From positions 186,001 through 250,000 of the IMG/VR virus record IMGVR_UViG_3300018080_008436: DNA of 64,000 nt. One strand, given 5' to 3'. The translations under genes and the position numbers were made by a program. This document shows, piece by piece, positions 16,355-51,869 of the stretch. The stretch's first letter is position 1. Every line of letters begins with the position of its first letter. The notes beneath the pieces were generated by a model, which made no database searches, was not told the DNA's origin, and saw only the letters and a program-made list of their open reading frames with translations.

Positions 16355-16418
16355 TTCATCTAAATCAATGCTGATCGTTATTCTCTTTCATCTAAATCAG
16401 TGCTGATCGTTATTCTCT
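16355..16418. repeat. 32-bp tandem duplication
   Basis: TTCATCTAAATCARTGCTGATCGTTATTCTCT x2 with one mismatch. Confidence 0.9.
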
Positions 16419-17916
16419 CGATATCGGCAGTTAGTCCACCTCCACCATTTAGGCGAACTCCAAATCGAGGTGCGAGGGTTTGTTTTGTTGTTGATATTGT
16501 TTCTGAATACCTTACTACGTCATCAACTATATATTGGATATGAAATCCATCCTTTATTATTTTCAGTGAATACGTTGTTTTAGCGGTTTCAAATGATGAT
16601 ACGACCTGTGTTCCAGAAGAGTTGACAACTCTAATCCAATGATTTCCCCCAGTATTAGCCAAAATGCTAATAATCATATTGCTAGTATTAACGAGGTAAA
16701 GATTTATCTGATCATAGTTTCCACTTGCATTAGGAAGAGAGACGTTAGAGTAGTCAACCTCGAATGAATAATCGTTGAAGTCAAATGCTGGATTTGCATT
16801 TTTCAATTGGAAACTTGTATATCTAGAAGAAAGCCCCGTATCATTAATTACTATTTTCCCTCCAGAAACATTCCACAATGTTACTTCGTCATTTGGTTCA
16901 TTGTACTTTTGGTCAGTAAGTGATGTACCTGGGAATTCATCAGATAAATCATCTAAAAGATATCTACTTGCCTGATCTACAGCAATTGCGTCGAAATCTG
17001 CACTTTTATCTTCTGCCCAACCAATAACAGTTTGTACCCATGCAGGTCCAGATGTACCTCCTTGATGTCTTCCCATGCTACTTCCAGCGGTAGTGCTAGT
17101 TGAAGCAAGAGATATATTTTCAGTATCAATTCCAAACATTTGTATTTTACTACTAGATCCATTAAATAATCCCATACAAAGTGCCGATCCTTCACTAAGT
17201 GCCCTTGCAGTTCCAATACCACCTGCGCCACCATCATACAAATTCCAACTCCAAGAGCCAAAACTGTTGCTCTGCACATTACAATAATTACCTGTTGAAG
17301 GGGCATTATCAATAATATAATTAGCTTGACTTCCATTTTGCCTAATTGCTCTTGTCGCATAGGTATAGGTTGTTCCAACTACTGTCGTATCAGTATTAAC
17401 TAAAGCACTAGTACTAGCATTAACCTTGATAAAAGCATAACCCCAAGGGTCTTTGTTGACAACTCCACTTTCACAAATTGTACTGGCGGTTCCACTTCCA
17501 TTCCTAGTCAAATCTTTTCCATTAACAGACTGATCATACCAAGTTATAACAACACCATTTGTTCCAGAACAAAATGTTTCTATAGCGTCAATATCTACAT
17601 GTCCAGTTCCGTCAGCATAAAAATCTTGAGAGGAAGTATCGCTAGTTCTTTCGACTTCAATTAATGGACCTGAATAACTTGGGTTTTCTTGCCAAAGTGA
17701 GTATATTTTATCTCCATCTGATAAAATTGGAGTGGGTCCATCAGAAGAAGAACTAGATGAACTCTCCAAAGCACACTCCAAGCAAAAATCATAAGTTCCG
17801 CCAATTTCAGATGGTTCTGCATTTTTGGAGCTTGTTGTCTCACCAATATACTTATAGCAAACTCCATTTATTTTAATAGATGGTCCATGATAATCATCAA
17901 ATATCTTATCTGCCAT
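16378..17916 (-). CDS. Ser-linker protein, shared N-terminal module plus lectin/jelly-roll-like domains (putative virion adhesin)
   Basis: Start MADKIFDDYHGPSIKINGVCYKYIGET...CLECALESSSS. Confidence 0.75.
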   Translation of the reverse strand: MADKIFDDYHGPSIKINGVCYKYIGETTSSKNAEPSEIGGTYDFCLECALESSSSSSSDGPTPILSDGDKIYSLWQENPSYSGPLIEVERTSDTSSQDFYADGTGHVDIDAIETFCSGTNGVVITWYDQSVNGKDLTRNGSGTASTICESGVVNKDPWGYAFIKVNASTSALVNTDTTVVGTTYTYATRAIRQNGSQANYIIDNAPSTGNYCNVQSNSFGSWSWNLYDGGAGGIGTARALSEGSALCMGLFNGSSSKIQMFGIDTENISLASTSTTAGSSMGRHQGGTSGPAWVQTVIGWAEDKSADFDAIAVDQASRYLLDDLSDEFPGTSLTDQKYNEPNDEVTLWNVSGGKIVINDTGLSSRYTSFQLKNANPAFDFNDYSFEVDYSNVSLPNASGNYDQINLYLVNTSNMIISILANTGGNHWIRVVNSSGTQVVSSFETAKTTYSLKIIKDGFHIQYIVDDVVRYSETISTTKQTLAPRFGVRLNGGGGLTADIERITISTDLDERE

Positions 17917-17920
17917 AATT

Positions 17921-19453
17921 TTACCAATTATCTCCTCTTTCCCAAGTGTAAGTAATGTTCCCAGGAGTAGTAAATGAACCAAATTGATTGTCGTTTATGC
18001 GATAGTCACTTTTACTTCCAAGTGGAGCATCCAAACCAACAGTAAAACTTCTGGTTGTAAATGTTTGAGTTGTTGCAGGTCCGAATCTCTGAGCAGAATA
18101 AATGTTCCCATCTCTTAGTTTAACAAGATTGAAGTATTGTTTAAACGTAAATGTCCCATTGTCATAAAGATTATATGATCTTTGAATCTCAAGATAACGT
18201 GGGGGATGATCTGAAACATTTCTCCATTCTTCTTTATATATAAAAGTAGAGAAAGGTGATGCAGGTGGAGTATATAAACTATATCCGCCTGAACTTGCAC
18301 AAACTCTTTTCTTAACACCATTGTCTGTAGGTAAATTCCAAGTCTCCCCACACCAATCTATCGTTTCTGTTGCGCCTGCATTTGAAACAGTAAGTATCAT
18401 ATCAGGTTCACTATTTGGGCAACTAACTGGCCCAGGAAGATCTCCTCCAGATTCACTTGAAGAACTCTCAGATGCAGAACTCTCAGATGCAGAACTCTCA
18501 GATTGGCTAGATGAACTTGAACTACGCGCTCCACATTCAAAACATGCAAAGCCAATAACATTTCTATAGCTTGCATTAGGGTTATTTTTATATCCTGTCC
18601 TATCTACAGAAACAACATTTGAGCTAATTCTTGATCCCCCAGTATCATTACATTTTTGATTTATGTATTCATCTATACTGTTCTCAACTGCGGCGATAGC
18701 TTCTTCTTCAGTTTCATATGTATTAGGACCAGCAGTAAATGGTCCCCATGAAGTTTGATATGTTGGAGTTTGATATGGAGCATCATTTTGATCACAAACA
18801 GTACATTCTGGAGTCATTGCCTCATAGAACTCTCTTGACTCTAATTGAGGTGCTCCTTGGCTACAAGGATTAATATAGAATATATTGTGCTGATCGACAA
18901 TATTATCAAATCCGCCAGTTCCAGTCCAGTTATCTAATATCCAAGTTTCAAGTGCCCAATCTTCTCCGACAGTCCCTCCCCTAAACAACTCTCCAATCTG
19001 CCAATAACATTCTTCTCCGTCTGCCAAAACAGGCCATGTCGCTGATGAATCTGAGAAATCGCAAGTATTCACGTCAAATCCAACAAACCAAATGCTGTAC
19101 GCTTCTTGTGAACTTTCTGACACTTCACTTTGTTGATCTCCATCTCCTGACTCAGATGACTCTGAAACTTCTGATTCTGATCCTGTTGAAAGAGAATTTG
19201 ACCATGAACTCATGGAGACGCTACTTCTGGATACACTAGATAATGAAGAAGAAACATTTCCTTCTGATTCTGAACTAGCTGAACTAGTTGAAGATGAACT
19301 TTCAATATCACATGCAAGACATGAATCAAATGTTCCTTCTATTTCAAATGGATATGTATTAACGGCTTCAGTCACTTCGCCTATGTAATTATAACAGATA
19401 CCATCTATTTTGACGGATACTCCTTGATATTCTTTAAAAACTTTCATCGCCAT
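17921..19453 (-). CDS. Ser-linker protein with shared N-terminal module
   Basis: MKVFKEYQGVSVKIDGICYNYIGE...SCLACDIESSSS; Cys-rich modules between Ser tracts. Confidence 0.8.
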   Translation of the reverse strand: MAMKVFKEYQGVSVKIDGICYNYIGEVTEAVNTYPFEIEGTFDSCLACDIESSSSTSSASSESEGNVSSSLSSVSRSSVSMSSWSNSLSTGSESEVSESSESGDGDQQSEVSESSQEAYSIWFVGFDVNTCDFSDSSATWPVLADGEECYWQIGELFRGGTVGEDWALETWILDNWTGTGGFDNIVDQHNIFYINPCSQGAPQLESREFYEAMTPECTVCDQNDAPYQTPTYQTSWGPFTAGPNTYETEEEAIAAVENSIDEYINQKCNDTGGSRISSNVVSVDRTGYKNNPNASYRNVIGFACFECGARSSSSSSQSESSASESSASESSSSESGGDLPGPVSCPNSEPDMILTVSNAGATETIDWCGETWNLPTDNGVKKRVCASSGGYSLYTPPASPFSTFIYKEEWRNVSDHPPRYLEIQRSYNLYDNGTFTFKQYFNLVKLRDGNIYSAQRFGPATTQTFTTRSFTVGLDAPLGSKSDYRINDNQFGSFTTPGNITYTWERGDNW

Positions 19454-22567: not shown

Positions 22568-25500
22568 TTATTCCTCAAAACCATCTCCAAAATACTGCTC
22601 TGGGAATGCCTCTGAGCTACTTGATTCTGAATATTCTTCGGAACTACTACTTGATTCTGAATATTCTTCGGAACTACTACTTGATTCAGATTCTGAACTT
22701 GAACTTTCGCTTTCTGAACTACTTGATTCGCTTTCTGAACTACTTGATTCTGAATATTCTTCGGAACTACTACTTGATTCAGATTCTGAACTTGAACTTT
22801 CGCTTTCTGAACTGCTTGATTCGCTTTCTGAACTGCTTGATTCGCTTTCTGAACTTTCACTCTGGGATGAGGACGATTCAGACTGAGAACTACTGGACTC
22901 TGACTGAGATGATTCACTCTGGGAACTACTGGATTCTGATTTGGAACTACTGGATTCACTTTGAGATGATTCACTCTGGGAACTACTAGATTCTGACTGA
23001 GAACTATCACTCTGGGATGAGGACGATTCAGATTTGGAACTACTAGATTCTGACTGAGAACTATCACTCTGAGAACTACTAGATTCTGATTTGGAACTAC
23101 TAGATTCTGACTGAGAACTATCACTCTGAGAACTACTAGAACTTTCTGAATAACCTTCTGAACTAGTTGAAGAACTTTCTGAATATTGTTCAGAACTAGA
23201 ACTTGATTCATTTGGACAATCATATGGAGCAGTTGGAACATCAAAATTATCAGTCCAAACAGCTAAACCTTTAACAATTCTAACTTCATCTATATGACCA
23301 CCAAAATATGTTCCACCTCTGGTATAATATCCTATGTAAGATTGTTGGGTAAAATTAGTAAATGTACCTGAGTATGAGCCAGTTGATGTTTGAGCTACAC
23401 CATCAATATACAAGGTCTGCGTATTATTATCTGCATTATGAACAAACGCAATATGCGTCCATGTACTGGAAGAAATCGCACTATTACTCATAATTTCAAA
23501 ATCCCAAGATCCTCCAGTAAGATGACCAGCATACACAACTCCGTTCAATGCTACATAAACTGTGAATAAGTTGTTTGTATCTGTACGAAATTCTATAAGT
23601 CCTCCGCCAGCAGTATATCGTGCCCAACAATCAAACGTAAGGCTCCCAGATCCGATGTTCCAATCATCGCTGTCAGGAATTGATAGGTAATCAGAATTAC
23701 CATCTAACAAGAGACTTGCTCCACCAAATTTACTTTGAGCAGTATCAACTTGAGCAGTGCCATTTGCCGTAACAACATGTTTACTGTCAGATTCATCTGG
23801 GAAGTTAGTTGATCCATCCTCTCCGTCGCAGTGAAGAAGAAGTTTTGTATTCAAGCAAACTTGTTCAGTTGACTCAGATGAACTTTCTGAGTAACCTAAC
23901 GAAGACGAACTAGAACTCTCTGAATAACCTTCTGAACTACTACTTGATTCTGAACTTGAACTTTCGCTTTCTGAACTGCTTGATTCGCTTTCTGAACTGC
24001 TTGATTCGCTTTCTGAACTGCTTGATTCGCTTTGTGAACTGCTTGATTCGCTTTGTGAACTATTTGACTGAGAGCTACTTGACTCTGATTGAGATGACTC
24101 ACTCTGAGAACTAATACTTTCAGTAAAAAGATCACAAGGAAGATAGATGTGATTTATATTCTCAGTTGAACTACTTGAGCTTTCTGATTTGGAACTACTT
24201 GATTCAGAGTAATTTTCTGAAGAACTTGAACTTCCTGAGCTTTCAGATTGAGAACTTTCAGATTGGGACGACTCTGATTGAGAACTTGAACTTTCAGATG
24301 AACTACTGGATTGTGACGACTCAGATTGCGAAGAAGAACTTTCAGATTGCGAAGAAGAACTCTCTGAGAATCCTTCAGATGAACTACTGGATTGTGACGA
24401 CTCAGACTGCGAAGAGGAACTTTCAGATTGCGAAGAAGAACTCTCTGAGAATCCTTCAGATGAACTACTGGATTGTGACGACTCAGACTGCGAAGAGGAA
24501 CTTTCAGACTGCGAAGAAGACGATTCTGATTGACTACTTTCTGAATACCCACCTGAACTACTAGACTCTGATTGTGATGACTCTGATTGTGATGACTCTG
24601 AGCTAATACTCTCAGTAAACAAGTCACACTCTCTATACCTATGTCGAACATTCTCGGTTGAACTACTGGATGAGTTACTACTAGAGGATTCACTACTAGA
24701 GGATTCACTACTTATGCTTTCAGTAAACAATTCGCAAGGAAGATAGCCGAAGTGAACATTCTCAGTTGAGCTACTTGAAGACTCACTTGATTCGGATTGA
24801 GATGATTCACTTTGAGATGAAGACGACTCAGATTCAGATTTTGATGATTCACTCTGAGAACTGTCTGATTGTGATGAACTGGATTCAGATTTTGATGATT
24901 CACTCTGACTACTTGAGCTTTCTGACTTACTGGATTCTGATTGACTACTGTCAGACTGCGAACTGTCTGATTGACTACTGTCAGACTGCGAACTTGAGGA
25001 CTCAGATTTTGACGATTCACTTTGAGATGATTCAGAATAAGAACTTATACTTTCAGTAAACAAATCACATGGAGCGTACTCATGATTTACATTCTCAGTG
25101 GAAGAACTGCTTGAACTCTCTGATTGAGAACTCTCACTTTGACTAGAAGATGATTCTGATTGAGAGGAGCTTGATTCTGAATAATTCTCAGAACTTGTGC
25201 TTGAACTCTCAGAATAACCTTCACTTGAAGTCGATGAACTTGAATCCTTGGAAGAACTTGAACTTGAATCCTTGGAAGAACTTGAAGAACTTACAGGACA
25301 AACTCCAGGCTCTAACGTTGGCGCAGGAGATGTTCCTGTATTTACAAACCATTCCAATGAACTTGGTGATACCCATGGTGCTGTTACGGCTGTATCGTAT
25401 ACAGATACTCCATCTAAGATATCAGACATCGTCCATTTACTTGAATCTGAAAAATATAAAAACCTAGATCCGTTGTAATAATATGTTGTATCATTATGTA

Positions 25501-37481: not shown

Positions 37482-37486
37482 ATTTT

Positions 37487-37692: not shown

Positions 37693-37698
37693 GTCATA

Positions 37699-37770: not shown

Positions 37771-37798
37771 ATCTTACTTAAATTTTCAAAGATCATTC

Positions 37799-39413: not shown

Positions 39414-39605
39414 TTATTTTTTGGATCGTTCCCTATTTAACGACTCTCTAAGGGAATAAGTGTCGAAGGCCATGACCGAAATCATTTCAAGCATTACTTG
39501 ATCCAAAGGCTTATAGCCACCTTTATACAATTTTAGTAAACTCTCTACGTGATAATTATGTTTGGCGATTCTCTCCAATTCCCCTAACAGCTTCCTCTTC
39601 CTCAT
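39414..39605 (-). CDS. hypothetical protein
   Basis: 63 aa, overlaps the upstream ORF. Confidence 0.5.
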   Translation of the reverse strand: MRKRKLLGELERIAKHNYHVESLLKLYKGGYKPLDQVMLEMISVMAFDTYSLRESLNRERSKK

Positions 39606-40876: not shown

Positions 40877-41863
40877 TTATGGTGGACTACTCTTATATGG
40901 ATGTCCAGTTGGTAAACTTCCTTCTTGGCCCCACTTCCAAGCGAGATATCCCTCAACCTCTTGACGCTCTGTGTTTGTTAGTGCCTTTCTATAAACAAGA
41001 ACCTCTGCATAATCTGCTTGCATGAAGTTACTATATCCCTCATTCAGTGCGCCCAAGGTAAGTGTAGAGCTATAGTTCGGAATAGATGTGCTAGTTTCTG
41101 TACTTGTTTTACTTAAGCTACCGTCCACATACAATTTTGATCTTTGAGAAGCGATCAAAGATCCGTCAAATACTGTTTCCATCATATAAACCGTTCCACT
41201 ACTGAAAGTTTGAGGATCGGAATCCCACCTATCCCCAATACCGTTAATATCGATATATACATAACTATCATTCCAATAGAACATGCCATAAGCGTATTCC
41301 CCGAATTCGCCAAAACCAGTGCGCTTAGCGATAATGCCATCTGGATCTCCACTTAAAGTTGGTTTTAGCATTACCAATATTGTTAATCCTGAAGTTCCGT
41401 CTAAAGTGTCATCGTCTGGAACAACCAATATGTCTGAAACTCCATCAAATCTAACGACATATTTTCCATCTAAGGCATTTGAGACATATGTGGGTTGATC
41501 AGTACCCGTACCTTGAGCCGCATGGTTTTCATTCCCTGATTTATCGTCCCATTGACTAACGAATCCTCCTGATTCAGTAATCGTATCAGAGTCGTCTGCA
41601 TCAAGCCACAGAACTAAATTTGATATATCGGACGGCATAAATCCATCTGAACTCGAAGAACTACTTGAAGATACGTTGTTGAAACTTTCAGAGCTTTCTG
41701 AAGAACTTGATTCTAGAGCACACTCTAGACAAGAATCAAAAGTTCCACCTACTTCAGATGGATCAGTATCAACTGGGGCCAAGGTTTCTCCTACAAAAAG
41801 ATAACATTCTCCATTTATTTTAATTGAAAGCCCTTGGTAATCTTGTAAAATCTTATCTGCCAT
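40877..41863 (-). CDS. shared N-module + LamG/concanavalin-like protein (paralog 6 of 6)
   Basis: LWLDADD...SQWDDKSGN...EVLVYRKAL...VEGYLAWKWG; 1-nt stop/start overlap. Confidence 0.82.
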   Translation of the reverse strand: MADKILQDYQGLSIKINGECYLFVGETLAPVDTDPSEVGGTFDSCLECALESSSSESSESFNNVSSSSSSSSDGFMPSDISNLVLWLDADDSDTITESGGFVSQWDDKSGNENHAAQGTGTDQPTYVSNALDGKYVVRFDGVSDILVVPDDDTLDGTSGLTILVMLKPTLSGDPDGIIAKRTGFGEFGEYAYGMFYWNDSYVYIDINGIGDRWDSDPQTFSSGTVYMMETVFDGSLIASQRSKLYVDGSLSKTSTETSTSIPNYSSTLTLGALNEGYSNFMQADYAEVLVYRKALTNTERQEVEGYLAWKWGQEGSLPTGHPYKSSPP

Positions 41864-42822
41864 TATGGTGCCGCTCCTTTGTATGGATGTGTTAACGGTA
41901 AATTATCTTCTAGCCCCCATTTCCAAGCAAGATAGCCTTCTAATTTTTGTCTGGTGTCAGTTGTTATATCGTTCTCAATAACGATTATCTCGCAAATGTA
42001 TCCATCCAAACGTTCGGTTGCTCTGTCAGCGACTCCCATTCCTTGAGAAGCGGTATTTGAAGTATTTCCTGCGGTTTGAAATGCTGTTGGCCCAGAAAGC
42101 GTTCCGTCATAAGTCGAATATACTTGTGCATTAGCCCAATCTGCAATAGAAACAAACATATGTGGGTCTGTATCGGTTGTTTGCCAAAAAATTTCTAAAT
42201 AGGAATCACTATCTAATCTTCTACCAGCAGTACCCAGGTCTCCAGCTTCAACCTGATGCTTTAATCTTGTGGAACCACTATTCTGATAAACCTCAAATAG
42301 AATATTTGTCCCAGTAATAACATCCTTCTTGTGAACAGTTAAAATCATAGCAGAAGGAACGTTTTGTAGATAAGCACCCGACCCGATAGCAATACTGTCA
42401 TCTCCATCAAAGTCTATTACATTTAAGCCATTTTGCGTTGTGGCACCAGTAGTTGGCTGTTCGGCACCAGTTCCTTGAGTTAAATGATAATCATTTCCTG
42501 ATTTATCATCCCATTGACTAACACTCCCTCCAGAATCAGTAATGGTATCTGTATCAGCCGCATCATACCAACCTAGCAATGTCAATTCTGCTGGGGTGAA
42601 ACCTCTACTTGATGAGCTACTTGATGAAGATACATTGTTAAAACTTTCAGAACTTTCTGAAGAGCTAGATTCTAAAGCACACTCTAAACAAGAATCGTAA
42701 GTTCCACCTATCTCTGAAGGGTCAGTGTCAACTGGAGCAGTCGTTTCCCCTACAAAAAGATAACATTCTCCATTTATCTTTATTGAAGGTCCCTGATATT
42801 GTTGTAAAATTTTATCTTCCAT
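41863..42822 (-). CDS. shared N-module + LamG-like protein (5 of 6)
   Basis: GWYDAADTDTITDSGGSVSQWDDKSGN. Confidence 0.82.
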   Translation of the reverse strand: MEDKILQQYQGPSIKINGECYLFVGETTAPVDTDPSEIGGTYDSCLECALESSSSESSESFNNVSSSSSSSSRGFTPAELTLLGWYDAADTDTITDSGGSVSQWDDKSGNDYHLTQGTGAEQPTTGATTQNGLNVIDFDGDDSIAIGSGAYLQNVPSAMILTVHKKDVITGTNILFEVYQNSGSTRLKHQVEAGDLGTAGRRLDSDSYLEIFWQTTDTDPHMFVSIADWANAQVYSTYDGTLSGPTAFQTAGNTSNTASQGMGVADRATERLDGYICEIIVIENDITTDTRQKLEGYLAWKWGLEDNLPLTHPYKGAAP

Positions 42823-43787
42823 TATGGTGGCGCTCCTTTATATGGATGATCTGATGGTAAATTATCTTCTAGACTCCATTTCCAGGCCAAATAACCTTCG
42901 AGTTTTTGTCTTGTATCCAAAGTCTCGTCTTCAACAACTATTAACTCCCCAATAGCTCCATCAAAACGTTTATTTCCTCCCCCAACATCTCCATCCCCGA
43001 TCTCAAATAACTGAGTTGTATCATTGGGAATAGAAGTTGGGTTCGTTTGAACAGACTCAGCTTGCTCAACCCCATTCACAAAACATCTAGCATCTCCATA
43101 TGTCCCACCCTGAGGTCTTGTCATTACAGTTATGGTAGGGGTACTAAGAGTTACTGGTGTATATTTGTCATTACCATTATTATATCTCCAAGCCCATCCA
43201 TCAGAACCAACAGACACCTTAATTGAATTTGTGACATTTCCACTAAAACCACACCAACGATCATCTGAAGTTACACTACTATCAACCACTATGACTACGG
43301 CAATCATAACATCAGGGTTAGCTCCAAGACCAAGTCTTGAATTTATAGATAATTCTTTTTGTGGGAAATCTAGAATATTTAACCCATTTATATTTCTTGT
43401 TCCTGTAATTGGTTGATCTGATCCGCTTCCTTGAGTTACATCATAATTATTCCCAGACTTGTCGTCCCATTGACTTACATTTCCACCTGAATCCGTTATG
43501 GTGTCAGAATCTGTTGCGTCCCACCAACCAACAGGACTGACATCTAATGGATTAAACCCTCTACTTGATGAAGAACTGCTAGAAGAAACATTATTAAAAC
43601 TCTCCGAACTGTCTGAGGAACTAGAAGTACTTGATTCCAATGTACACTCAAGACAAGAGTCAAAAACCCCACCTATTTCAGATGGATCTGCATTAATTGC
43701 TTCAGTTGTCTCTTCAACAAATAAATAGCATTGTCCATCTATCTTAACTGAAGCCCCCTGATAATCTTGAAATATCTTAACTGACAT
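42822..43787 (-). CDS. shared N-module + LamG-like protein (4 of 6)
   Basis: Start MSVKIFQDYQG at 43787 (TAATG overlap). Confidence 0.82.
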   Translation of the reverse strand: MSVKIFQDYQGASVKIDGQCYLFVEETTEAINADPSEIGGVFDSCLECTLESSTSSSSDSSESFNNVSSSSSSSSRGFNPLDVSPVGWWDATDSDTITDSGGNVSQWDDKSGNNYDVTQGSGSDQPITGTRNINGLNILDFPQKELSINSRLGLGANPDVMIAVVIVVDSSVTSDDRWCGFSGNVTNSIKVSVGSDGWAWRYNNGNDKYTPVTLSTPTITVMTRPQGGTYGDARCFVNGVEQAESVQTNPTSIPNDTTQLFEIGDGDVGGGNKRFDGAIGELIVVEDETLDTRQKLEGYLAWKWSLEDNLPSDHPYKGAPP

Positions 43788-44668
43788 TATGGAACCCACT
43801 TATTATTCAAATAATTAATCACAGTATCTTGCTCAGAACTTGTCAAATCTTCGTTATAGAAAATCAATTCGCAAAGAGCCATTTTTAAATACCTAACATT
43901 CCCTGAGATAGGATCACCACCTATACGGATGTTGTTATAAACTGATCCTGCAATTGTTGAACCTCTCTGAAACTTAGAAACTTGTATCTGATCAAAAGTA
44001 AAACTAGCTGATGCAACTCCATTAACTTCAAAATCACCATCTGTATAACAAAAATCATTGGCATCATTTGTTGGTCTCCAAGCCGCAACAGTTCCACTAG
44101 CTAGTCGAATGTTACCTCTATCGCCTGCATTTGAGACCAAACCACTACAACATCCAGTATTTGGCTGACCAGACTTTACAATGACTGCCGCAAAGACCCA
44201 CTCCATATCTGTAACATTAATAGAATTCCTTTGCAGAAAATCATTTGAACCATCAAAAGTTAAAGTGTTAAGATTATTTTGAGTTTCCAATTCTGTTTGA
44301 GGCTGATTCGACCCAGTTCCCTGAGTTACATGGAAATTGTTTCCTGATTTATCATCCCATTGACTAACAAATCCACCTGAATCGGTTATAGTGTCCGTAT
44401 CAGATGCGTCATACCACAAAGACAAGCCTGGGATATCATATGGGAAGAAGCCACTTGATGACGAACTGGAAGAAGAAGTATTTCCTATGCTTTCAGAACT
44501 GTCTGAAGAACTTGATTCTAGAGCACACTCTAAACACGAACTAAAAGTCCCACCTACCTCTGATGGATCGGTATCTACTGGAGCAGTTGTTTCTCCTACA
44601 AAAAGATAACACTCTCCGTTTATCTTAATTGAAGGACCTTGATATTCTTGTAAGATTTTATCATCCAT
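43787..44668 (-). CDS. shared N-module + LamG-like protein (3 of 6)
   Basis: Start MDDKILQEYQG at 44668 (TAATG overlap). Confidence 0.82.
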   Translation of the reverse strand: MDDKILQEYQGPSIKINGECYLFVGETTAPVDTDPSEVGGTFSSCLECALESSSSDSSESIGNTSSSSSSSSGFFPYDIPGLSLWYDASDTDTITDSGGFVSQWDDKSGNNFHVTQGTGSNQPQTELETQNNLNTLTFDGSNDFLQRNSINVTDMEWVFAAVIVKSGQPNTGCCSGLVSNAGDRGNIRLASGTVAAWRPTNDANDFCYTDGDFEVNGVASASFTFDQIQVSKFQRGSTIAGSVYNNIRIGGDPISGNVRYLKMALCELIFYNEDLTSSEQDTVINYLNNKWVP

Positions 44669-45534
44669 TATATGCCCCACTTATCAGACAAATAATCTTC
44701 CACTTGTAATCTCTCACTAGTCGTTAAAGCTCTATTGTATATTATTATTTCTCCAATATCACCATTAAAAGTCTCCCCAATACGCAAACTATAATTAGAT
44801 GGGTTGGCAAAATCATTTGTTGTTAAGTCGCTGAACTGGGAGGTTCCATTCATCCAAACATTCTGGCCAACACCATCTTCATTCCTCATGGTAAAATAAT
44901 TCCAGTTATTACCTCCAGTCCAAGACCACTGACACCTTCCTCCAGCACTCCATTCTCCAAAATCGAAATACCCATCACCAGTACTCCACGTCAAGTGACA
45001 TCCAATTCTATTTACTTCTCTTGGATTTGAAAAAATTGGATAGCTTGCTGTAGTTACGCTTCTTTTCTGAACGATGAACATTGTTATATCATCTTGAGGC
45101 CATGTATATGGATCTTTATCCATGTAATCTCCCCCATCCCATCTAATAATATTATTGCCATTTTGAACATTTGTTTGATAGGTTGGTTGTAACGAACCAG
45201 TCCCTTGAGTAACATCATTGTCATTACCTGATTTGTCATCCCATTGACTAACACTGCCAGAGGATTCTGTTATGGTATTAGAATCAGCCGCGTCAAGCCA
45301 CAATTGAATGTCTGCAATATCATATGGGAAGAAACCACTCGAACTGGAAGAAGAACTTGAATCCAACGAACTTGATGAACTTTCTAGAGTACACTCCAAA
45401 CAAGAATCATAGGTCCCTCCAATCTCAGATGGGTCAGCATTAATACTTTCAGTTGTTTCCTCAACAAATATATAACACTGCCCATCGATTTTAACAGAAA
45501 AGCCTTGATAATTTTGAAATATCTTAACTGACAT
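44668..45534 (-). CDS. shared N-module + LamG-like protein (2 of 6)
   Basis: Start MSVKIFQNYQG at 45534 (TGATG overlap). Confidence 0.82.
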   Translation of the reverse strand: MSVKIFQNYQGFSVKIDGQCYIFVEETTESINADPSEIGGTYDSCLECTLESSSSSLDSSSSSSSSGFFPYDIADIQLWLDAADSNTITESSGSVSQWDDKSGNDNDVTQGTGSLQPTYQTNVQNGNNIIRWDGGDYMDKDPYTWPQDDITMFIVQKRSVTTASYPIFSNPREVNRIGCHLTWSTGDGYFDFGEWSAGGRCQWSWTGGNNWNYFTMRNEDGVGQNVWMNGTSQFSDLTTNDFANPSNYSLRIGETFNGDIGEIIIYNRALTTSERLQVEDYLSDKWGI

Positions 45535-46457
45535 CAGATTCCCCACTTATCCATTAAATAATTTTCAACAGTAATTCTTTCACCATCTGTTAAATCTCTA
45601 TCATAAATAACAACTTCTCCACAATAGAACCTGGCATAAGCATTGTTCCCTCGATTAACTCCTAATCTAATTCTACTTGAAAAAAGACTAAAAGTATCAT
45701 TTCTAGTTGAGCCTGTTTGACTACCGTTTAAAAAGGCTTTTTGTTGAGATCCTGTATTCCAAGCTGTAAAAAGATATCTAGTATTATTAACTGGACTTCC
45801 ATATGTTATCTGCCTTTGAGTTGTGGTAGCATCATGATATCTATAGTCCATATTAGCTGACCCTGCAAAACTTAACTGTAATGCTCCAGCAAAATTAAAT
45901 ACATTATGACTACTATATATACCATCATTAGTGTCAAATGGAGAGAACGCAGTAACAGCCATAAAAATTGTAAATGCTCCTGATGGACTTGCAGATAAGT
46001 TTTCCATATCATCATCAACTCCATCAAAAAACATACAGCCAAGGCCATTAAAACCAGAAGAAAGATATTGAGGTTGTTTGGTTCCAGTCCCTTGAGTTAA
46101 ATCCCACCCTCCAGTCCATTTGTCATCAATTTGGGAAATAGATCCTGCTGACTCTGTAATCGTATTAGAATCTGATGCATCATACCAAGCATAAAGGTTG
46201 TTGATGTCATATGGGTAGAAACCACTTGAGGAAGAGCTACTGGAAGAAACATTATTGAAACTCTCAGAACTTTCCGAAGAACTAGAAGTACTTGAAGAAC
46301 TAGACTCTAATTCACATTGAAGACAAGAGTCGTAAATTCCACCAATCTCAGATGGGTCAGCATTAATTGCTTCGGTAGTTTCCTCAACGAATATATAACA
46401 CTGCCCATCGATTTTAACAGAAGAGCCTTGGTAATCTTGAAATATCTTGACTGACAT
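45534..46457 (-). CDS. shared N-module + LamG-like protein (1 of 6)
   Basis: AWYDASD...EVVIYDRDLT...VENYLMDKWG. Confidence 0.82.
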   Translation of the reverse strand: MSVKIFQDYQGSSVKIDGQCYIFVEETTEAINADPSEIGGIYDSCLQCELESSSSSTSSSSESSESFNNVSSSSSSSSGFYPYDINNLYAWYDASDSNTITESAGSISQIDDKWTGGWDLTQGTGTKQPQYLSSGFNGLGCMFFDGVDDDMENLSASPSGAFTIFMAVTAFSPFDTNDGIYSSHNVFNFAGALQLSFAGSANMDYRYHDATTTQRQITYGSPVNNTRYLFTAWNTGSQQKAFLNGSQTGSTRNDTFSLFSSRIRLGVNRGNNAYARFYCGEVVIYDRDLTDGERITVENYLMDKWGI

Positions 46458-46499
46458 TAGTATAAAAAGTTTTGATTGTCTCGATATTTATTTCAAGAT

Positions 46500-47273: not shown

Positions 47274-47675
47274 TTATTCTGTTAGATCTGTTAATTTGAA
47301 CTGAGGGCTGTTTACACTTGCTTGTAAAGGCTCGACTGGAGTTATATTATCTTCTAATTCTTCTTTTGTTGCACCAATTATTTGAAGAACCTCTCCATCA
47401 ATATTGTCTACATCAAACTTTCTATAGCTAATTTTGGTCATTTCATCTCCATCAAAAACAGCGTATGGATAGACAATTTGTGGGTGATCCTCTCCATTTA
47501 GTCTCATATTCATTAATTGAGATTCCAAATCAGGATCATCTAAATGAATTCGAATAAATTCTTTATCTTCTTGAATTCCCCAAGGTGAATCATCAAGTTT
47601 AACTATAATAATATCTCCTTTCTCGTGAACCCCATGTAGACTAAATCCATTATTTACAAGTGCTATTAATGCCAT
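47274..47675 (-). CDS. hypothetical protein, paralog of 22071-22553
   Basis: See the 22071 feature for the shared motif. Confidence 0.75.
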   Translation of the reverse strand: MALIALVNNGFSLHGVHEKGDIIIVKLDDSPWGIQEDKEFIRIHLDDPDLESQLMNMRLNGEDHPQIVYPYAVFDGDEMTKISYRKFDVDNIDGEVLQIIGATKEELEDNITPVEPLQASVNSPQFKLTDLTE

Positions 47676-47685: not shown

Positions 47686-48846
47686 CTATGTGTTTAATTC
47701 AAATGCTCCAATATCTGGAGGATCTTTTCTAGTTGTTCCAAGTATATCTGTCTCTACTCCAGAAATAGCTATCCCAGCCGCATAGATGTCAGCACTAGAA
47801 TTTTTAACACTATGATCAGACCCAACTGTCGTCCATTGATCGGAGCTGGATTTACTTATTAAATTACCACTTCCCAACCAAGAATTCGCTGTGGTATCAG
47901 AAGAACAACAATAGTCAACATTTTCTGTAATAATTCCAAGTGTGTAAAAATCATCCCCACCATTATCCATACTAATGTTGTTCTGGCAATTCCAATCAAC
48001 AGTGACATCATTTAAGGTGCGGATGTAAAAACCTCTTGTTCCATAGTTGTAAATAGAATTATTATATGTATTAAGAGTGTAGTTATATGTGCCATCATTC
48101 TCATAAAGTTGAAATGCTACTGCACCATCTCTTGTTTCACTTCCCGAACAATAGAATGAATTATTGATAATATTAAATACACCATCTACGTTATAGACAT
48201 TAATAAATATACAAAATGCGCTATTAGCTCCCTGTAATTGGAATACGCAGTTCTTAACTGTCAAATGATTCGCATGACCTTCACCTTGAGCAAACAATGT
48301 GGTAGCAAATGTATTTGTCCCGATTACTCTCATTCCATCAATTTCTACATATGGGTCAACAATTGTAAATACACTACCACTTGAAGAACAATACGCCCCA
48401 TTGAGGGCAGTTGTTCCATCATGTTTGTGGCCATCTGCTGGAGCTATTTTTAGATGATTATTCTCATCTTGATTAGTGCCTCCACTAATTACACATGTTC
48501 CTGCGTTAAACCCTGAATCAACTAAGCCGAGAACGACACCTCTGTCCGTAAAGTCTGTATTTCTAGCCGCTTCAAATGCGGCTAATGAAGAATAATCTCC
48601 ATCGATGTTTTTTATTGTATAAACTTCTGGATCTCCAAATGATGAAGTAGAGCTAGATTCCGAATAAGCTTCAGATGATGATGAAGAACTGGATTCTAAT
48701 TTACATTCCAAACAAGAGTCGTAAGTTCCACCTATAACACTTGGGTCTGTATTAAATGGTTGAGTCGTTTCTCCAATAAATTTATAACAAACATCATTTA
48801 TTTTAATAGATGCTCCTTGATAATCATCAAATATTTTATTTGCCAT
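47686..48846 (-). CDS. shared N-module + beta-helix-like domain
   Basis: TIKNIDGDYSSLAAFE...VEIDGMRV...NNSIYN...PPDIGAFE, homologous to the N-terminal domain of the 19464 ORF. Confidence 0.8.
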   Translation of the reverse strand: MANKIFDDYQGASIKINDVCYKFIGETTQPFNTDPSVIGGTYDSCLECKLESSSSSSSEAYSESSSTSSFGDPEVYTIKNIDGDYSSLAAFEAARNTDFTDRGVVLGLVDSGFNAGTCVISGGTNQDENNHLKIAPADGHKHDGTTALNGAYCSSSGSVFTIVDPYVEIDGMRVIGTNTFATTLFAQGEGHANHLTVKNCVFQLQGANSAFCIFINVYNVDGVFNIINNSFYCSGSETRDGAVAFQLYENDGTYNYTLNTYNNSIYNYGTRGFYIRTLNDVTVDWNCQNNISMDNGGDDFYTLGIITENVDYCCSSDTTANSWLGSGNLISKSSSDQWTTVGSDHSVKNSSADIYAAGIAISGVETDILGTTRKDPPDIGAFELNT

Positions 48847-48861
48847 AATTTACTCTTTTCT

Positions 48862-49365
48862 TTATGGATAATTGGTAGGCAATAAATTCCCATAAAAAGT
48901 TACTGTTGGAGCATAAGCAACTTCTACCAAATCACCTACTTCCACATCAAAAGGTACAGATTGAGTTTTTGATCGTACTCCTCCACCTCTATACTCTTCA
49001 ACATTATTGATTTTAATGCTACAAGTGTAACCAAGGTTACCAGTATGCCAAACTCTCAAAACTCCATCTCTTGGGACAGAATCTATTAATGTTGAATATG
49101 TCCCACCAACTCCAGTTTTATAGAAATAATTCTCGCTAAGATAATATGCGACTGCATGTTCTATTGCAGTTAATGTAGTTCTACCTTGACTGTCTGCTGT
49201 TATATATGCAGAATAACCTGATATATTGTCATAGATCACAGAACTTAAACTAGCATCTTTAGGAGTTCCATCTGTTTTAGTTCCAACATACTCAAAAGCT
49301 TTTTGAGTTCCTTGGTCATTTATGACAATAGCAGAGCCAACATAAGAATAATAATGTTTACTCAT
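48862..49365 (-). CDS. hypothetical protein, paralog of 49380-49862
   Basis: Shared R.WHTGN.GYT...VEVAYAPTVTFYG..LP.NYP. Confidence 0.72.
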   Translation of the reverse strand: MSKHYYSYVGSAIVINDQGTQKAFEYVGTKTDGTPKDASLSSVIYDNISGYSAYITADSQGRTTLTAIEHAVAYYLSENYFYKTGVGGTYSTLIDSVPRDGVLRVWHTGNLGYTCSIKINNVEEYRGGGVRSKTQSVPFDVEVGDLVEVAYAPTVTFYGNLLPTNYP

Positions 49366-49379
49366 AATTCACCTCATTG

Positions 49380-49862
49380 TTATGGATAATTAAATGGCAA
49401 TATAACGCCATAAAAAGTTACTGTTGGAGCATAAGCAACTTCTACTGAAGCGCCTTCCGCAACATTAAAGCCTCTCGACAAAGTAAAAGATTTTGCATGT
49501 GATGATGCATATATTTGCGATCCGTTAACAACTACTCGCATTGTATATCCAGCGTTACCAGTATGCCAAATCCTCATAACTCCCTCTGCGGGAGCACTAG
49601 ACCATAAAGTACTTAAACTGCCAGTAACACCACTGACAGAAGCGTAATTGGTAAACGCCAACAAATACTCTGCCCCATCATAGTCTGATTTCCCCTGTGG
49701 ATCTGCATATGTAAATATAGACCCATTAGATGTTCCTGTCACTCCTGATGGGTATGCACTAGGCACTCCTGTTGTTTGACCAATACGTTCAAGGTATACA
49801 ACCTCATCCCCAATATCATACGAGACTCCATCTCCTTGATCTGATGTAAAATAATAACTCAT
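49380..49862 (-). CDS. hypothetical protein, paralog of 48862-49365
   Basis: Same shared C-terminal motif. Confidence 0.72.
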   Translation of the reverse strand: MSYYFTSDQGDGVSYDIGDEVVYLERIGQTTGVPSAYPSGVTGTSNGSIFTYADPQGKSDYDGAEYLLAFTNYASVSGVTGSLSTLWSSAPAEGVMRIWHTGNAGYTMRVVVNGSQIYASSHAKSFTLSRGFNVAEGASVEVAYAPTVTFYGVILPFNYP

Positions 49863-49873: not shown

Positions 49874-50440
49874 TTAAAAAGATCCTTGTTGATATTCATA
49901 AACTGTTGGGGTTACATCAATAGATTTTTGGTTATATTCCCAAACATTTTGTGGGAAGCAAGCCTCTTCACAAACATCAACAACTTGGTCTTCTGAGAAA
50001 TTCTGATAAGCAAGTGGAGCGTCAAGAGTGATGATGTCTTCTGCTCCATAGTTTCTGTAATGACCACTGTAAATCGCATCTATACAAACAGGTCCTTCGT
50101 TAATGACCCCTAAAAATGGGGGTGGTGAGAACTGCAATCCATTTATGTTTTCAAGTACATGTTGAATAGTACCATTAGTACACTCATAAGAACTTGAAGA
50201 CGATTCATTACCAACAGATTCTGAAGATGAACTTTCTGCTCCAATAGATTCAGATGATTCTGACAATGAACTTTCAGATGAAGAACTATCTAAAGCACAT
50301 TCCAAACATGAATCAAAAACTTCTTCGATTTCAATTGGATAAGAATTAATAGGTTTTACGGTTTCACCGATCCATTTATAACAAACACCATTAATCTTAA
50401 TGGATGCTCCTTGATAATCGTCAAATATTTTATTCGCCAT
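49874..50440 (-). CDS. shared N-module protein
   Basis: MANKIFDDYQGASIKINGVCYKWIGET. Confidence 0.78.
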   Translation of the reverse strand: MANKIFDDYQGASIKINGVCYKWIGETVKPINSYPIEIEEVFDSCLECALDSSSSESSLSESSESIGAESSSSESVGNESSSSSYECTNGTIQHVLENINGLQFSPPPFLGVINEGPVCIDAIYSGHYRNYGAEDIITLDAPLAYQNFSEDQVVDVCEEACFPQNVWEYNQKSIDVTPTVYEYQQGSF

Positions 50441-50450
50441 AATTTACTCC

Positions 50451-51869
50451 TTAAACTGCTCCACCATCATAAACTGCTCCCCATTCTGATCCAATTGCAG
50501 TTCTCCCTGCTTCAGCGGCACCTCCCGCAGTGTATTTACTGTTGCCGAACGTTGGGATTCCTGCGGCAGGTTTTAACGATTGACCTCCCCATGAAATCAG
50601 AAGTGCATCATAGTTAGCAGTAGACAGGGCATCGTAAGGAGTGCCACGAGCTATTTCTGCCATGAACTCATGTATTACTGTGACGTTAGAAACATCCCAG
50701 TTGCTGAGGTCTTGGTCAAAATTAGGTTGGAACCTAATGGCTTGTTGAATATCAGTAACGCTTGATGTATCCCACACCCCTATCGGCTGATTGAATACGC
50801 CTCTACTGGCTAAAGTTGCACCTAGCATATTTGCCAGTGTTGTCACGTTACCCATGTTTGTAAAGTTTTGGATCGCGCCATTGAATAAAGGACAAGTATT
50901 AAACATACCTGAGCAGTCAGTGACACTATTCATGTCCCAGTTCCAATTTGCGCTTGCGCCTGTCATTCCAGTACATCCTGCGAACATCCATGAACAATCC
51001 GAACACGCCGACAAATCAGGCACATCAGATGCGGTGATTTCAAGGCCACTACAACTCGAAAATGCGTTAGCCATCTGAGGCCACTGATACGTTCCCCACT
51101 GTCGAATTTCTTTGAGCTTTGATGCATATCCCCATCCTGAAATCCAACCAGAAGAAGAAGAGAAGTCAACAGACATTTCATACTCGGTATCTGCGTCAGG
51201 ATAGATATGTTCGATTATAAATCCACCAGTAACCGTTTGTTGGTTTCCATCACCCCAATCAATATATGTTGTGTTAGGGTTACCTATGTAAATTTGAACT
51301 GTTTTATTCTCTCCTGAATCCCACAATGCTTTAAAAAGATCACCCTCAGGGTAAGAACTGCTTGACGAACTTGAAGTTGAACATGGATCATCACAAACCT
51401 CTACAACTTGTCCAACCGAATACTTACTTGCCGCACCTGGCTCAACTAAAGAAATACCAATCCAAAGACCAACATTTATCTCTCCAATATCATTTCCATT
51501 TACACAAACAAAACCTGAAAAAGTATTTAATGGAGAAGTTGATTCAAAGCCTAATACATTTCCTACAATGGTTAATATTGAAACAGTGGCACAACCTTCT
51601 GAACTTGATGAAGAAACATTTTCTTCACTTTCTGAAGAATTGGAACTAGAAGAACTGCTAACATTACCAATTGATTCAGAAGATGATGATTGAGTACTTT
51701 CTGATGAACTTGATTCAATAGCACATTCGAGACAATTATCAAAAACTTCTTCTATTTCGCTTGGGCTTGAATTAACAGAACTAGTTGTTTCACCGATCCA
51801 TTTATAACAAACCCCACCTATTTTAATTGATGCTCCTTGATAATCGTCAAATATTTTTTCTCTACCCAT
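50451..51869 (-). CDS. shared N-module + BspA/DUF285-type repeat protein
   Basis: WDMNSVTDCSGMF, WDTSSVT, NFDQDLSNWDVSNVT repeats. Confidence 0.85.
   Translation of the reverse strand: MGREKIFDDYQGASIKIGGVCYKWIGETTSSVNSSPSEIEEVFDNCLECAIESSSSESTQSSSSESIGNVSSSSSSNSSESEENVSSSSSEGCATVSILTIVGNVLGFESTSPLNTFSGFVCVNGNDIGEINVGLWIGISLVEPGAASKYSVGQVVEVCDDPCSTSSSSSSSYPEGDLFKALWDSGENKTVQIYIGNPNTTYIDWGDGNQQTVTGGFIIEHIYPDADTEYEMSVDFSSSSGWISGWGYASKLKEIRQWGTYQWPQMANAFSSCSGLEITASDVPDLSACSDCSWMFAGCTGMTGASANWNWDMNSVTDCSGMFNTCPLFNGAIQNFTNMGNVTTLANMLGATLASRGVFNQPIGVWDTSSVTDIQQAIRFQPNFDQDLSNWDVSNVTVIHEFMAEIARGTPYDALSTANYDALLISWGGQSLKPAAGIPTFGNSKYTAGGAAEAGRTAIGSEWGAVYDGGAV

What the first reader, a model, noticed from the sequence alone, without database searches (positions are those of the whole stretch)
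16378..51869. Twelve ORFs share a ~50-aa N-terminal module followed by a Ser linker and variable payloads
The consensus KIFxDYQGxSIKIxGxCYxFxGET...PxEIxGTxDSCLECxLESSSS begins the ORFs at 16378, 17921, 38140, 40877, 41863, 42822, 43787, 44668, 45534, 47686, 49874 and 50451. A shortened internal copy (VNGVCYQRVG...NCEEC) is in the 30163 ORF. Payloads include LamG-like, beta-helix and BspA-type domains. Inference: a common docking domain attaches an interchangeable set of adhesins to the virion.
Basis: partly seen in the sequence, partly recalled or inferred. Interest (0 to 1): 0.65.

Follow-up and report, generated by a model that had tools for sequence, protein, structure and literature searches.

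The report
Shared head domain on phage fibres
A 476-kb uncultured sediment phage carries twenty copies of an undescribed 50-residue cysteine-bearing domain. Nineteen of them start proteins that continue as a floppy serine string and end in different sugar-binding or sugar-cutting domains, so the domain is most likely a common foot tethering varied fibres to the virus particle.

Summary
All twelve minus-strand genes begin with an ungapped 52-residue module (invariant Y9, G11, C20, Y21, P35, C45, L46, C48) followed by a serine-rich linker. The whole 476-kb virus genome holds 19 N-terminal copies plus one internal copy, in the 30163 ORF. The module matches no Pfam or PHROG family and no solved fold. 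An exhaustive profile search of 1.84 billion proteins found only about 90 relatives, all metagenomic, nearly all at residue 1 and followed by a flexible linker. AlphaFold folds it confidently (pLDDT 91), so it is a folded domain and not an export signal. Synonymous sites are near saturation, so the similarity reflects purifying selection rather than recent gene conversion. The payloads are confirmed: LamG, right-handed beta-helix, BspA/DUF285, ConA-like and FG-GAP. Module genes lie downstream of the tape-measure gene in four phage contexts, three of them unrelated phages. The LamG payload is homologous to annotated virion structural proteins. Together these support virion fibres. Docking by the module itself is still inferred, and tandem internal copies in other phages show it can also act as a stalk bead. 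Glycosyltransferase, methyltransferase or sulfotransferase genes flank all three module loci here and three loci in other phages, which suggests modified linkers. I rate it a new domain family within a known design principle.

The parts
16378..17916 (-). Module protein (512 aa): module 17761-17916, short Ser linker, ConA-like ArabFuran-catal payload
   Evidence: A homologue, P0054, has the same architecture in a tail cluster of another phage.
17921..19453 (-). Module protein (510 aa): module 19298-19453, 51-aa Ser linker, payload of unknown family
38140..39348 (-). Module protein (402 aa): module 39193-39348, Ser linker, second module (mod2, 4 Cys), second Ser linker, unknown payload
40877..46457 (-). 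Tandem array of six module + Ser linker + LamG proteins: 40877-41863, 41863-42822, 42822-43787, 43787-44668, 44668-45534, 45534-46457
   Evidence: Pfam Laminin_G_3. Mutual BLAST hits. phrog_10356 'virion structural protein', E 8e-35. Modules are 60-90% identical, payloads 28-43%.
47686..48846 (-). Module protein (386 aa): module 48691-48846, Ser linker, right-handed beta-helix payload
49874..50440 (-). Module protein (188 aa) with no distal payload: module 50285-50440, Ser linker, mod2 only
   Evidence: The AF2 model gives mod2 (aa 84-163) pLDDT about 90, a small beta-barrel.
50451..51869 (-). Module protein (472 aa): module 51711-51869, Ser linker, mod2, DUF285/BspA-type repeats
31021..31182 (-). 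Internal module copy (aa 737-790) inside the 1075-aa protein 30163-33390. That protein also has a trypsin-like protease region and Ser linkers on both sides.
   Evidence: E 7e-11 with the family profile; sequence; phrog_20754 protease, E 3e-36
48862..49862 (-). Two small paralogues (167 and 160 aa) whose N-termini resemble a Cys-less module. A third copy follows the duplicated block outside the window.
   Evidence: hhalign probability 71%, E 4e-5
22568..30151 (-). 2527-aa protein, 49% Ser, with three 82-aa repeats and a C-terminal LamG domain. It has the same bead-on-a-serine-string design but a different N-terminal domain, shared only with the 30163 protein.
53454..63834 (-). Upstream cluster of glycan-modifying genes. 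Above the Pfam cut-offs: GT2-type transferase 58737-59528 and methyltransferase 58051-58767. Below the cut-offs: MptE-like 55290-56600, GT1-like 54362-55279 and GT2-like 57301-58041. These are candidate modifiers of the Ser linkers.

Best explanation
The module is a small, independently folding domain of about 50 aa: a beta-hairpin, a third strand and a short helix, carrying a C-x24-C-x2-C triad. It is the N-terminal head of a family of tethered virion fibre proteins in uncultured tailed phages. Each protein is built as head, flexible Ser-rich linker, optionally a second 84-aa four-Cys beta-barrel and a second linker, then a distal binding or enzymatic domain (LamG, beta-helix, BspA repeats, ConA-like, FG-GAP propeller). 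The most likely role of the head is to fix these proteins to a repeated site on the tail, or less likely the capsid. One conserved interface would then let this 476-kb phage display about nineteen different lectin-like or glycan-cutting tips. The linkers are probably O-glycosylated, and the glycans methylated or sulfated, by the phage transferases encoded beside every module locus.

Shown: the domain, its copy number, its fold confidence, its constraint, the payload identities, the tail-cluster context and the linkage to transferase genes. Inferred: presence in virions, docking by the head, the docking partner, and linker modification.
For: (1) There are twenty copies in one virus genome, 19 of them at residue 1. 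Genome-wide, 78 of 90 family copies are N-terminal, and 58 of those are followed by a Ser run; most of the rest are followed by PT or SP linkers.
(2) AF2 gives pLDDT 91.3 for the isolated domain, so it is a folded unit.
(3) Across the 171 copy pairs, mean pS is 0.66 against pN 0.24. In the LamG array modules are 88-90% identical while payloads are 28-43%. The head is held constant while the tips diverge, as expected for a shared interface.
(4) Context. The most divergent copy (712 aa, FG-GAP payload) lies five genes downstream of the 2077-aa tape-measure gene, among very large genes. In unrelated phage contigs, module genes follow Phage_tail_T/TMP_3 (L009), Phage_TAC_1/PhageMin_Tail (L006) and HK97-gp10-like/TMP_3 (L021).
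(5) The LamG payload matches phrog_10356 'virion structural protein' (E 8e-35). It also matches genes annotated as virion structural or tail protein in Synechococcus phage S-CBS4, cyanophage KBS-S-2A and Xanthomonas phage Xoo-sp2. The S-CBS4 genes sit at the end of the tail-fibre cluster.
(6) The payload types are those typical of receptor-binding proteins.
(7) Glycan-modifying genes lie next to module loci. In the window: GT2, a methyltransferase and a weak MptE-like hit. At the second array: Nucleotid_trans and an FkbM methyltransferase. In the tail cluster: a sulfotransferase. Elsewhere: GT29 in L006; GT8, a sulfotransferase and a methyltransferase in L007; and a faint MptE-like hit about 8 kb upstream in L009.
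Against: There is no direct evidence that any of these proteins is in a virion; the phage is uncultured and no proteome exists. No docking partner was identified. The unrelated phages that share the module share no other BLAST-detectable protein with this genome apart from a payload type. In P0024, P0047 and P0083 the domain occurs as 6-7 tandem internal copies with a period of about 63 aa. In P0058 and in the 30163 protein it is internal. That fits a stalk bead better than a pure docking plug. Two of the three module loci in this genome lie far from the tape-measure cluster. The complex prediction (homotrimer) could not be run. The 'virion structural protein' labels are database annotations that I could not trace to experiments.
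Confidence: 0.5

Rival explanations
1. The module is a generic structural bead, a metal- or disulfide-stabilised mini-domain that caps or spaces fibre proteins. It has no docking role of its own, and attachment to the virion (if any) uses other contacts.
For: Tandem arrays of 6-7 copies occur in P0047 and P0083, and about 7 in P0024. There is a single internal copy in the tail-tip-position protein P0058 and in the 30163 protein. Ten of 12 internal copies add a fourth Cys 9-12 residues after CxxC, as a self-contained fold would. Mod2 is a second Cys-bearing bead in the same proteins.
Against: It does not explain why 78 of 90 copies start exactly at residue 1 and are followed by a flexible linker. 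It does not explain why the head is held at 88-90% identity while the tips drift to about 30%. It also does not explain proteins made only of head plus linker, such as the 129-aa L009 protein.
Confidence: 0.2
2. The module is a recognition handle for the neighbouring transferases. These would bind it and then modify the adjacent Ser linker, much as a leader domain works.
For: Ser or PT/SP linkers follow the module directly in most copies. Transferase genes lie next to module loci in this genome and in L006 and L007, and there is a faint MptE-like hit about 8 kb from the L009 module genes.
Against: Many proteins in this genome have long Ser tracts but no module, including the 2527-aa, 2638-aa, 1001-aa and 812-aa proteins. 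Tandem internal copies lack linkers. The neighbouring transferase families differ from phage to phage.
Confidence: 0.1
3. The proteins are not virion parts. They are soluble or host-surface factors released at lysis or made during infection, for example matrix-degrading or adhesion-blocking proteins, and the module mediates their oligomerisation.
For: Two of the three module arrays lie among tRNA, release-factor-like and receiver-domain genes rather than among recognised structural genes. The nearest neighbours have no structural annotation.
Against: The module has no signal peptide or hydrophobic stretch (sequence). Module genes occupy a tail-cluster position in four phages. The LamG payload is homologous to annotated virion proteins.
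Confidence: 0.1
4. The module is a cleaved targeting sequence: either an export signal, or a capsid-targeting propeptide removed by a prohead protease at the acidic end of its helix (often L-E before the Ser run).
For: It is N-terminal, and many copies have an acidic residue just before the linker. A protease-domain protein with its own module copy is encoded nearby.
Against: Charged residues occur throughout the first 20 positions and there is no hydrophobic core, so it is not a Sec- or Tat-type signal. It folds with pLDDT 91. It occurs internally and in tandem. Position 51 is not conserved (A, D or V in some copies). The payloads are extracellular-type lectin and glycan-binding domains.
Confidence: 0.05

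Closest known systems
Conserved N-terminal anchor domains of multi-RBP (branched) phages, such as the depolymerase sets of Klebsiella phages (Latka et al. 2019, PMC6872550, found). From my own knowledge: phiK64-1 with eleven depolymerases, and the tailspike sets of CBA120 and G7C.
   Same: Several paralogous receptor-binding proteins share a conserved N-terminal part and differ in their distal domains. The genes are clustered, and the beta-helix payload type is shared.
   Different: There is no sequence or fold relation: no Pfam, PHROG or PDB match. The head here is only about 50 aa with three Cys. It is joined by long Ser linkers rather than a rigid trimeric neck. There are 19 copies, and the payloads are mostly lectin-like and not depolymerase-like.
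Cellulosome dockerin-cohesin system
   Same: It would work the same way if the docking reading is right: a small conserved module, a low-complexity linker and interchangeable carbohydrate-active payloads displayed on a common scaffold.
   Different: The module has no Ca-binding dockerin repeats. No cohesin-like scaffold was identified. It is N-terminal whereas dockerins are usually C-terminal, and the setting is a virus particle.
Glycosylated phage virion proteins (mycobacteriophage capsid and tail-tube glycosylation by phage transferases; Freeman et al. 2023, from my own knowledge; the phrase 'virion glycosylation' turns up in the papers) and glycosylated Mimivirus fibrils (own knowledge)
   Same: Virus-encoded transferase genes lie next to genes for Ser/Thr-rich structural proteins.
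   Different: Modification is only inferred here. The substrates would be long Ser linkers of many different fibres.
Serine-rich repeat adhesins of Gram-positive bacteria (GspB, Fap1; own knowledge)
   Same: Ser-rich tracts flank a binding domain, and dedicated glycosyltransferases are encoded nearby.
   Different: There is no signal peptide, AST domain, SecA2/Y2 system or cell-wall anchor, and these are phage-encoded proteins.

Membership tests
Any curated protein family (Pfam-A, PHROGs) covering the module | Significant profile match over residues 1-52 | tested here: not met
   No family covers the module in any of the scanned module proteins (Pfam; PHROGs). All hits lie in the payloads.
Known solved folds (PDB) | Sequence or structural match of the AF2 model (pLDDT 91) | tested here: not met
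   PDB profile search: 0 hits at E<=10. Foldseek against PDB: 0 hits. VIA-align against 48,161 chains: best Z 2.1. BFVD: no hit with E<5.
Sec/Tat signal peptide | Positively charged n-region, an uninterrupted hydrophobic h-region of 7-15 residues, and a cleavage motif | tested here: not met
   Consensus M-A-x-K-I-F-D-D-Y-Q-G-x-S-I-K-I-N-G carries D7, D8 and K15 inside the would-be h-region. The domain also occurs internally.
Zinc ribbon / treble-clef metal site | Four conserved metal ligands (Cys or His) from a knuckle and a helix N-terminus | tested here: inconclusive
   N-terminal copies conserve only three Cys: C20 in the hairpin, and C45 and C48 at the helix start. Ten of 12 internal copies add a fourth Cys 9-12 residues later.
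Dockerin | Duplicated Ca-binding loop-helix motif (D-x-D/N-x-D/N-G...D) | tested here: not met
   The motif is absent from the module and there is no Pfam Dockerin hit. The different N-terminal domain of the 22568 and 30163 proteins has D-x-D-G-N-like loops but no Pfam match at E<=1.
Phage tail fibre / receptor-binding protein (functional class) | Encoded in the tail module downstream of the tape-measure gene | tested here: met
   Met for one of the three loci in this genome: five genes downstream of phrog_167 TMP. Also met in L009, L006 and L021. Not met for the window array or the 290-301 kb array, which lie elsewhere.
Phage tail fibre / receptor-binding protein (functional class) | Physical presence in the virion and binding to a host receptor | not testable with these tools
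   The phage is uncultured. The only support is homology of the LamG payload to database-annotated virion structural proteins.
Laminin_G_3 (PF13385) payload | Score above the Pfam gathering cut-off of 27.6 bits | tested here: met
   The 40877 protein scores 42 bits. The 45534 protein scores 23.5 bits, below the cut-off. The other four are homologous to these by BLAST.
DUF285 / BspA-type repeats (PF03382) payload | Score above the cut-off of 25 bits | tested here: met
   87.7 bits in the 50451 protein. Its paralogue at genome 298584 is 42% identical over 383 aa.
Right-handed beta-helix payload | Pfam Beta_helix/NosD match or a structural match | tested here: inconclusive
   No Pfam hit at E<=0.1 for the 47686 protein. 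Atlas feature score is 0.96, all ten best named hits are in the beta-helix clan, and TM is 0.67-0.86.

The most novel reading that the evidence does not exclude
The phage runs a cellulosome-like plug-and-play display. One universal 50-aa docking head would let about nineteen different glycosylated, serine-tethered lectins and glycan-cutting domains be hung on a multi-copy site of a roughly 300-nm tail or of the capsid, giving a 'hairy', mucin-coated virion. In relatives, proteins with 6-7 tandem modules would act as scaffolds through module-module pairing. This would be a new mode of virion decoration and host-range breadth in huge phages.
Probability: 0.15. Interest if true: 0.85.

Novelty: new variant of a known kind. 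Interest (0 to 1): 0.6.

Why it matters
Huge phages are known almost only from metagenomes, and how they recognise hosts is an open question. This work defines a compact, confidently folding domain family with no Pfam, PHROG or PDB counterpart. It marks a large and otherwise unannotatable set of probable fibre proteins. It gives a searchable handle (profile A3) for finding receptor-binding candidates in uncultured phages. It also shows an unusual architecture of domain beads on serine strings, linked to phage-encoded glycan-modifying enzymes. If the head is a universal docking plug, it would be a natural, very small tag for attaching arbitrary binding domains to a phage particle. It would also explain how one virus can carry about twenty different tips.

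Tried and rejected
- The complex prediction of a module homotrimer (A3 x 3) was requested twelve times. The machine was busy each time, so there is no result and no conclusion.
- The word-index protein search found only this genome's own proteins.
- tblastn of two family members against 50,697 isolated-phage records found nothing.
- The genome-contig scan with the module found nothing. The broad alignment A3 was too diverse for pattern scanning.
Only one of five other contigs could be searched whole.
- Pfam Phage_sheath_1 and Baseplate_J were not found in the genome, so the tail type is unknown.
- I tested whether P0058 is a homologue of the 30163 or 33405 proteins. It is not.
- I suspected that the N-terminal domain shared by the 22568 and 30163 proteins is a dockerin. 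Pfam does not support this.
- The mod2 fold search gave only generic small beta-barrels (best Z 7.2). Several phage baseplate and tail-tip chains appear among them at high rmsd, which is not discriminating.
- An excess of N-x-S/T sequons in the linkers was considered. There are 20 in 490 linker residues, but this is hard to interpret in 64% Ser sequence, so I make no claim.
- Contigs laid from three metagenome runs showed identical sequence and assembly breaks at the modules, with no informative variation.
- LpxR homologues are at most 40% identical and spread over several Gram-negative lineages, so there is no host call.
- Paper searches found no description of this module.
Full report
**What is there.** The window lies at 186001-250000 of a single 476,248-bp contig with 39% G+C. 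The database holds it as a virus record with a CheckV completeness of 98%. The window carries 16 tRNA genes and a tmRNA. It also encodes a DNA polymerase III alpha subunit, RtcB, an LpxR-type lipid A deacylase and a release-factor-like protein. The same sequence sits on a 524,692-bp metagenome contig. It is held at near identity by sediment and seawater metagenome runs from three studies, one of which may be the source. This is a huge tailed phage of a Gram-negative host. LpxR relatives are at most 40% identical and scattered over several lineages, so I make no host call.

**The observation.** Each starts with the same ungapped 52-residue module followed by a serine-rich run.
- Four ORFs should start at the module-aligned ATG and not at the upstream TTG or GTG.
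- Y9, G11, C20, Y21, P35, C45, L46 and C48 are invariant.
- A profile of the twelve copies finds 19 copies in the six-frame translation of the whole genome at E 1e-19 to 1e-33. Twelve are in the window, six are in an inverted second array at 290757-300657, and one is at 370847-372985.
That makes twenty copies.

**Not gene conversion.** Over all 171 copy pairs the proportion of synonymous differences is 0.66, near saturation, against 0.24 for non-synonymous differences. Nucleotide identity is 53-85%. The copies are old, and the protein sequence is kept by selection. In the six-gene LamG array the modules form two subtypes, 88-90% identical within a subtype, while the payloads are only 28-43% identical. 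The most similar payload pair (42822 and 41863) carries different module subtypes. This hints at exchange across the linker.

**A folded domain without known relatives.**
- Pfam and PHROGs do not cover the module.
- The word-index search found only the genome's own proteins.
- The exhaustive profile search of 1.84 billion representatives found 92 proteins at E<=1e-3 and 46 at E<=1e-10, all unnamed and metagenomic. At least three of them (P0046, P0067, P0087) are spurious repeats by inspection.
- Isolated phages have none.
- AlphaFold2 with the 84-sequence alignment gives pLDDT 91.3. The model has a hairpin (13-22), a third strand (38-42) and a helix (45-52). C20 lies on the hairpin, and C45 and C48 lie at the helix start.
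- No PDB sequence match, Foldseek match or BFVD match was found, and the best VIA-align Z is 2.1.
- The only shape match is a viral hypothetical-protein cluster in the ESM Atlas (TM 0.69).

**How the family is built.** I classified 90 family copies.
- 78 copies are N-terminal. Of these, 58 are followed by a Ser run, and most of the rest by PT- or SP-rich linkers.
- 12 copies are internal. Ten of them lack a linker and add a fourth Cys 9-12 residues after CxxC.
- P0047 has six tandem copies and P0083 has seven, with a period of about 63 residues. P0024 has about seven.

The domain is therefore autonomous and can serve as a stalk bead. Its dominant use is as the very first element of a protein, ahead of a flexible tether.

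**Linkers and the second module.** In this genome the linkers are 6-51 residues long, 64% Ser and 11% Glu. They contain a recurring unit of the type S4-E-S-[IF]-[GN]-N-x. Eight of the 19 proteins carry a second conserved 84-residue module with four Cys directly behind the linker, usually followed by a second Ser linker. This second module is never found without the first. AlphaFold models it as a small beta-barrel at pLDDT about 90. Structural matches are generic barrels with Z up to 7.2. Two proteins, 49874-50440 and its paralogue outside the window, consist only of head, linker and second module. A 129-aa protein in another phage is head plus Ser tail only.

**Payloads.**
- Six tandem LamG proteins.
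- A right-handed beta-helix in the 47686 protein.
- DUF285/BspA repeats in the 50451 protein and its paralogue.
- A ConA-like ArabFuran-catal domain in the 16378 protein.
- FG-GAP repeats in the copy at 370847.
- Several payloads remain unassigned.

**Evidence for virion fibres.**
- The 2077-aa gene at 386980-393213 is a tape-measure protein (phrog_167, E 6e-18). The most divergent module gene lies five genes downstream of it, in a run of very large genes.
- In three unrelated contigs, module genes follow recognisable tail genes. In L009 the order is Phage_tail_T, TMP_3, three genes, then two module genes. In L006 it is Phage_TAC_1, PhageMin_Tail, three genes, then a module gene. In L021 it is an HK97-gp10-like gene, TMP_3, two genes, then the 1040-aa P0058 with an internal module.
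- L006 and L009 share nothing else with this genome by BLAST except one payload type (L021 was not compared). The module has therefore moved between distinct phages while keeping its position.
- The LamG payload matches phrog_10356 'virion structural protein' (E 8e-35).
- It is 25-36% identical to genes annotated as virion structural or tail protein in S-CBS4, KBS-S-2A and Xoo-sp2. In S-CBS4 these genes end the tail-fibre cluster. These labels are database annotations that I could not verify.

**Glycan-modifying neighbours.**
- In the window, upstream of the array, the hits above the Pfam cut-offs are a GT2-type transferase (Glyco_tranf_2_2, E 1e-13) and a methyltransferase. MptE-like, GT1-like and a further GT2-like hit fall below the cut-offs.
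- The second array is preceded by a Nucleotid_trans transferase and an FkbM methyltransferase.
- The tail cluster holds a sulfotransferase that is 44% identical to one next to P0024 in L007. L007 also has a GT8 (weak hit) and a methyltransferase.
- L006 has a GT29-like gene directly after the module gene. L009 has a faint MptE-like hit about 8 kb upstream.
- Long Ser tracts also fill other large proteins of this genome, including a 2527-aa protein that is 49% Ser and ends in a LamG domain.

Modification of the linkers is a reasonable inference, but it is not shown.

**Interpretation.** The best reading is that these are tethered virion fibres and that their conserved head provides the common attachment. 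Four points favour attachment by the head:
- the head sits strictly at the N-terminus, ahead of a flexible tether;
- the head is far more constrained than the tips;
- some proteins consist of a head and linker alone;
- the distal domains are too diverse to share an anchor.

Four points count against it:
- no partner is known;
- tandem and internal copies exist elsewhere;
- two of the three arrays lie away from the tail genes;
- nothing shows that these proteins are in virions.

The module has no hydrophobic core, it folds confidently, and it occurs internally. A cleaved capsid-targeting propeptide is unlikely for the same reasons, and because the residue before the linker is not conserved.

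**Comparison and novelty.** The design works like the conserved N-terminal anchors of multi-RBP phages (PMC6872550) and, in logic, like dockerin-tagged cellulosomal enzymes. It is not a member of any of those families by sequence or fold. I rate it a new domain family used in a new variant of a known design. The unusual features are the copy number (20), the bead-on-serine-string architecture and the linked transferases.

**Not done.** The homotrimer complex prediction was requested twelve times and never answered, so it carries no weight either way.

Noticed in passing
window 22568-30151 and 30163-33390 (minus strand): These two proteins share a different 120-aa N-terminal domain. It is an internal duplication of about 57 aa that starts M-G-C-A-D-F and has D-x-D-G-N-like loops, and it is followed by Ser linkers. 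Only these two copies exist in the genome and there is no Pfam match. It looks like a second 'head + serine string' family.
   Followed up: partly
window 22568-30151 (minus strand): A 2527-aa protein that is 49% serine, with 76% of its length in Ser-rich windows. It has three copies of an 82-aa domain and a C-terminal Laminin_G_3 domain (E 4e-18). It is mucin-like in composition.
   Followed up: partly
window 46500-47057 (minus strand): A 185-aa release-factor-like protein (end of PCRF plus an RF-1 domain with the GGQ motif) embedded in the module array. A relative's contig (L037) has the same neighbourhood: module gene, RF-like gene, cREC_REC receiver gene.
   Followed up: partly
window 6972-7352; 9503-11212; 36350-37873; 51945-53206: A tmRNA gene and 16 tRNA genes in four clusters, including tRNA-Ile(tat). 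The module arrays are interleaved with tRNA clusters.
   Followed up: no
window 15354-16334 (plus strand): A full-length LpxR lipid A 3'-O-deacylase homologue (Pfam E 4e-102). The closest genomic relatives are at most 40% identical and come from Rhodospirillaceae, Thioalkalivibrio, Desulfuromonas and others. It may be a phage tool for remodelling the host outer membrane.
   Followed up: partly
window 59528-63046 (minus strand): Four paralogous proteins of about 245 aa (34-70% identical) with no Pfam match. They lie inside the transferase/methyltransferase cluster 53454-63834.
   Followed up: partly
L001 9129-12099 (genome 295129-298099, plus strand): Four tandem paralogues of about 233 aa (44-55% identical). 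The one scanned matched Pfam Beta_helix. None has a module, and they sit in the middle of the second module array.
   Followed up: partly
window 47274-47675 and 22071-22553 (minus strand): Two paralogous small proteins (133 and 160 aa, 35% identical) with no family. Each lies next to a beta-helix-type gene (47686 and 19464).
   Followed up: no
window 39556-40005 (minus strand): A stand-alone cREC_REC receiver domain (cyclic-phosphate processing type, E 2e-12), not far from RtcB (12412-13680). This suggests an RNA-repair-linked signalling pair.
   Followed up: no
window 36440-37315 (minus strand): A gene resembling an HTH + DUF559/MTES_1575 endonuclease sits between two tRNA genes. It has the look of a homing endonuclease.
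   Followed up: no
genome 386980-393213 and 340024-355484: The tape-measure protein is 2077 aa, which would imply a tail roughly 300 nm long if the usual 1.5 Å per residue holds (own knowledge). No sheath or Baseplate_J family was detected. Two genes of 2638 and 2513 aa lie at the far end of the same gene run.
   Followed up: partly
window 46300-46460, 48760-48860, 50370-50450: Public-run contigs (Logan) break or cross-join exactly at the module copies, so short-read assemblies of this region are fragmented by the repeat. X2 and X3 give pieces of identical size and may be one data set filed twice.
   Followed up: partly
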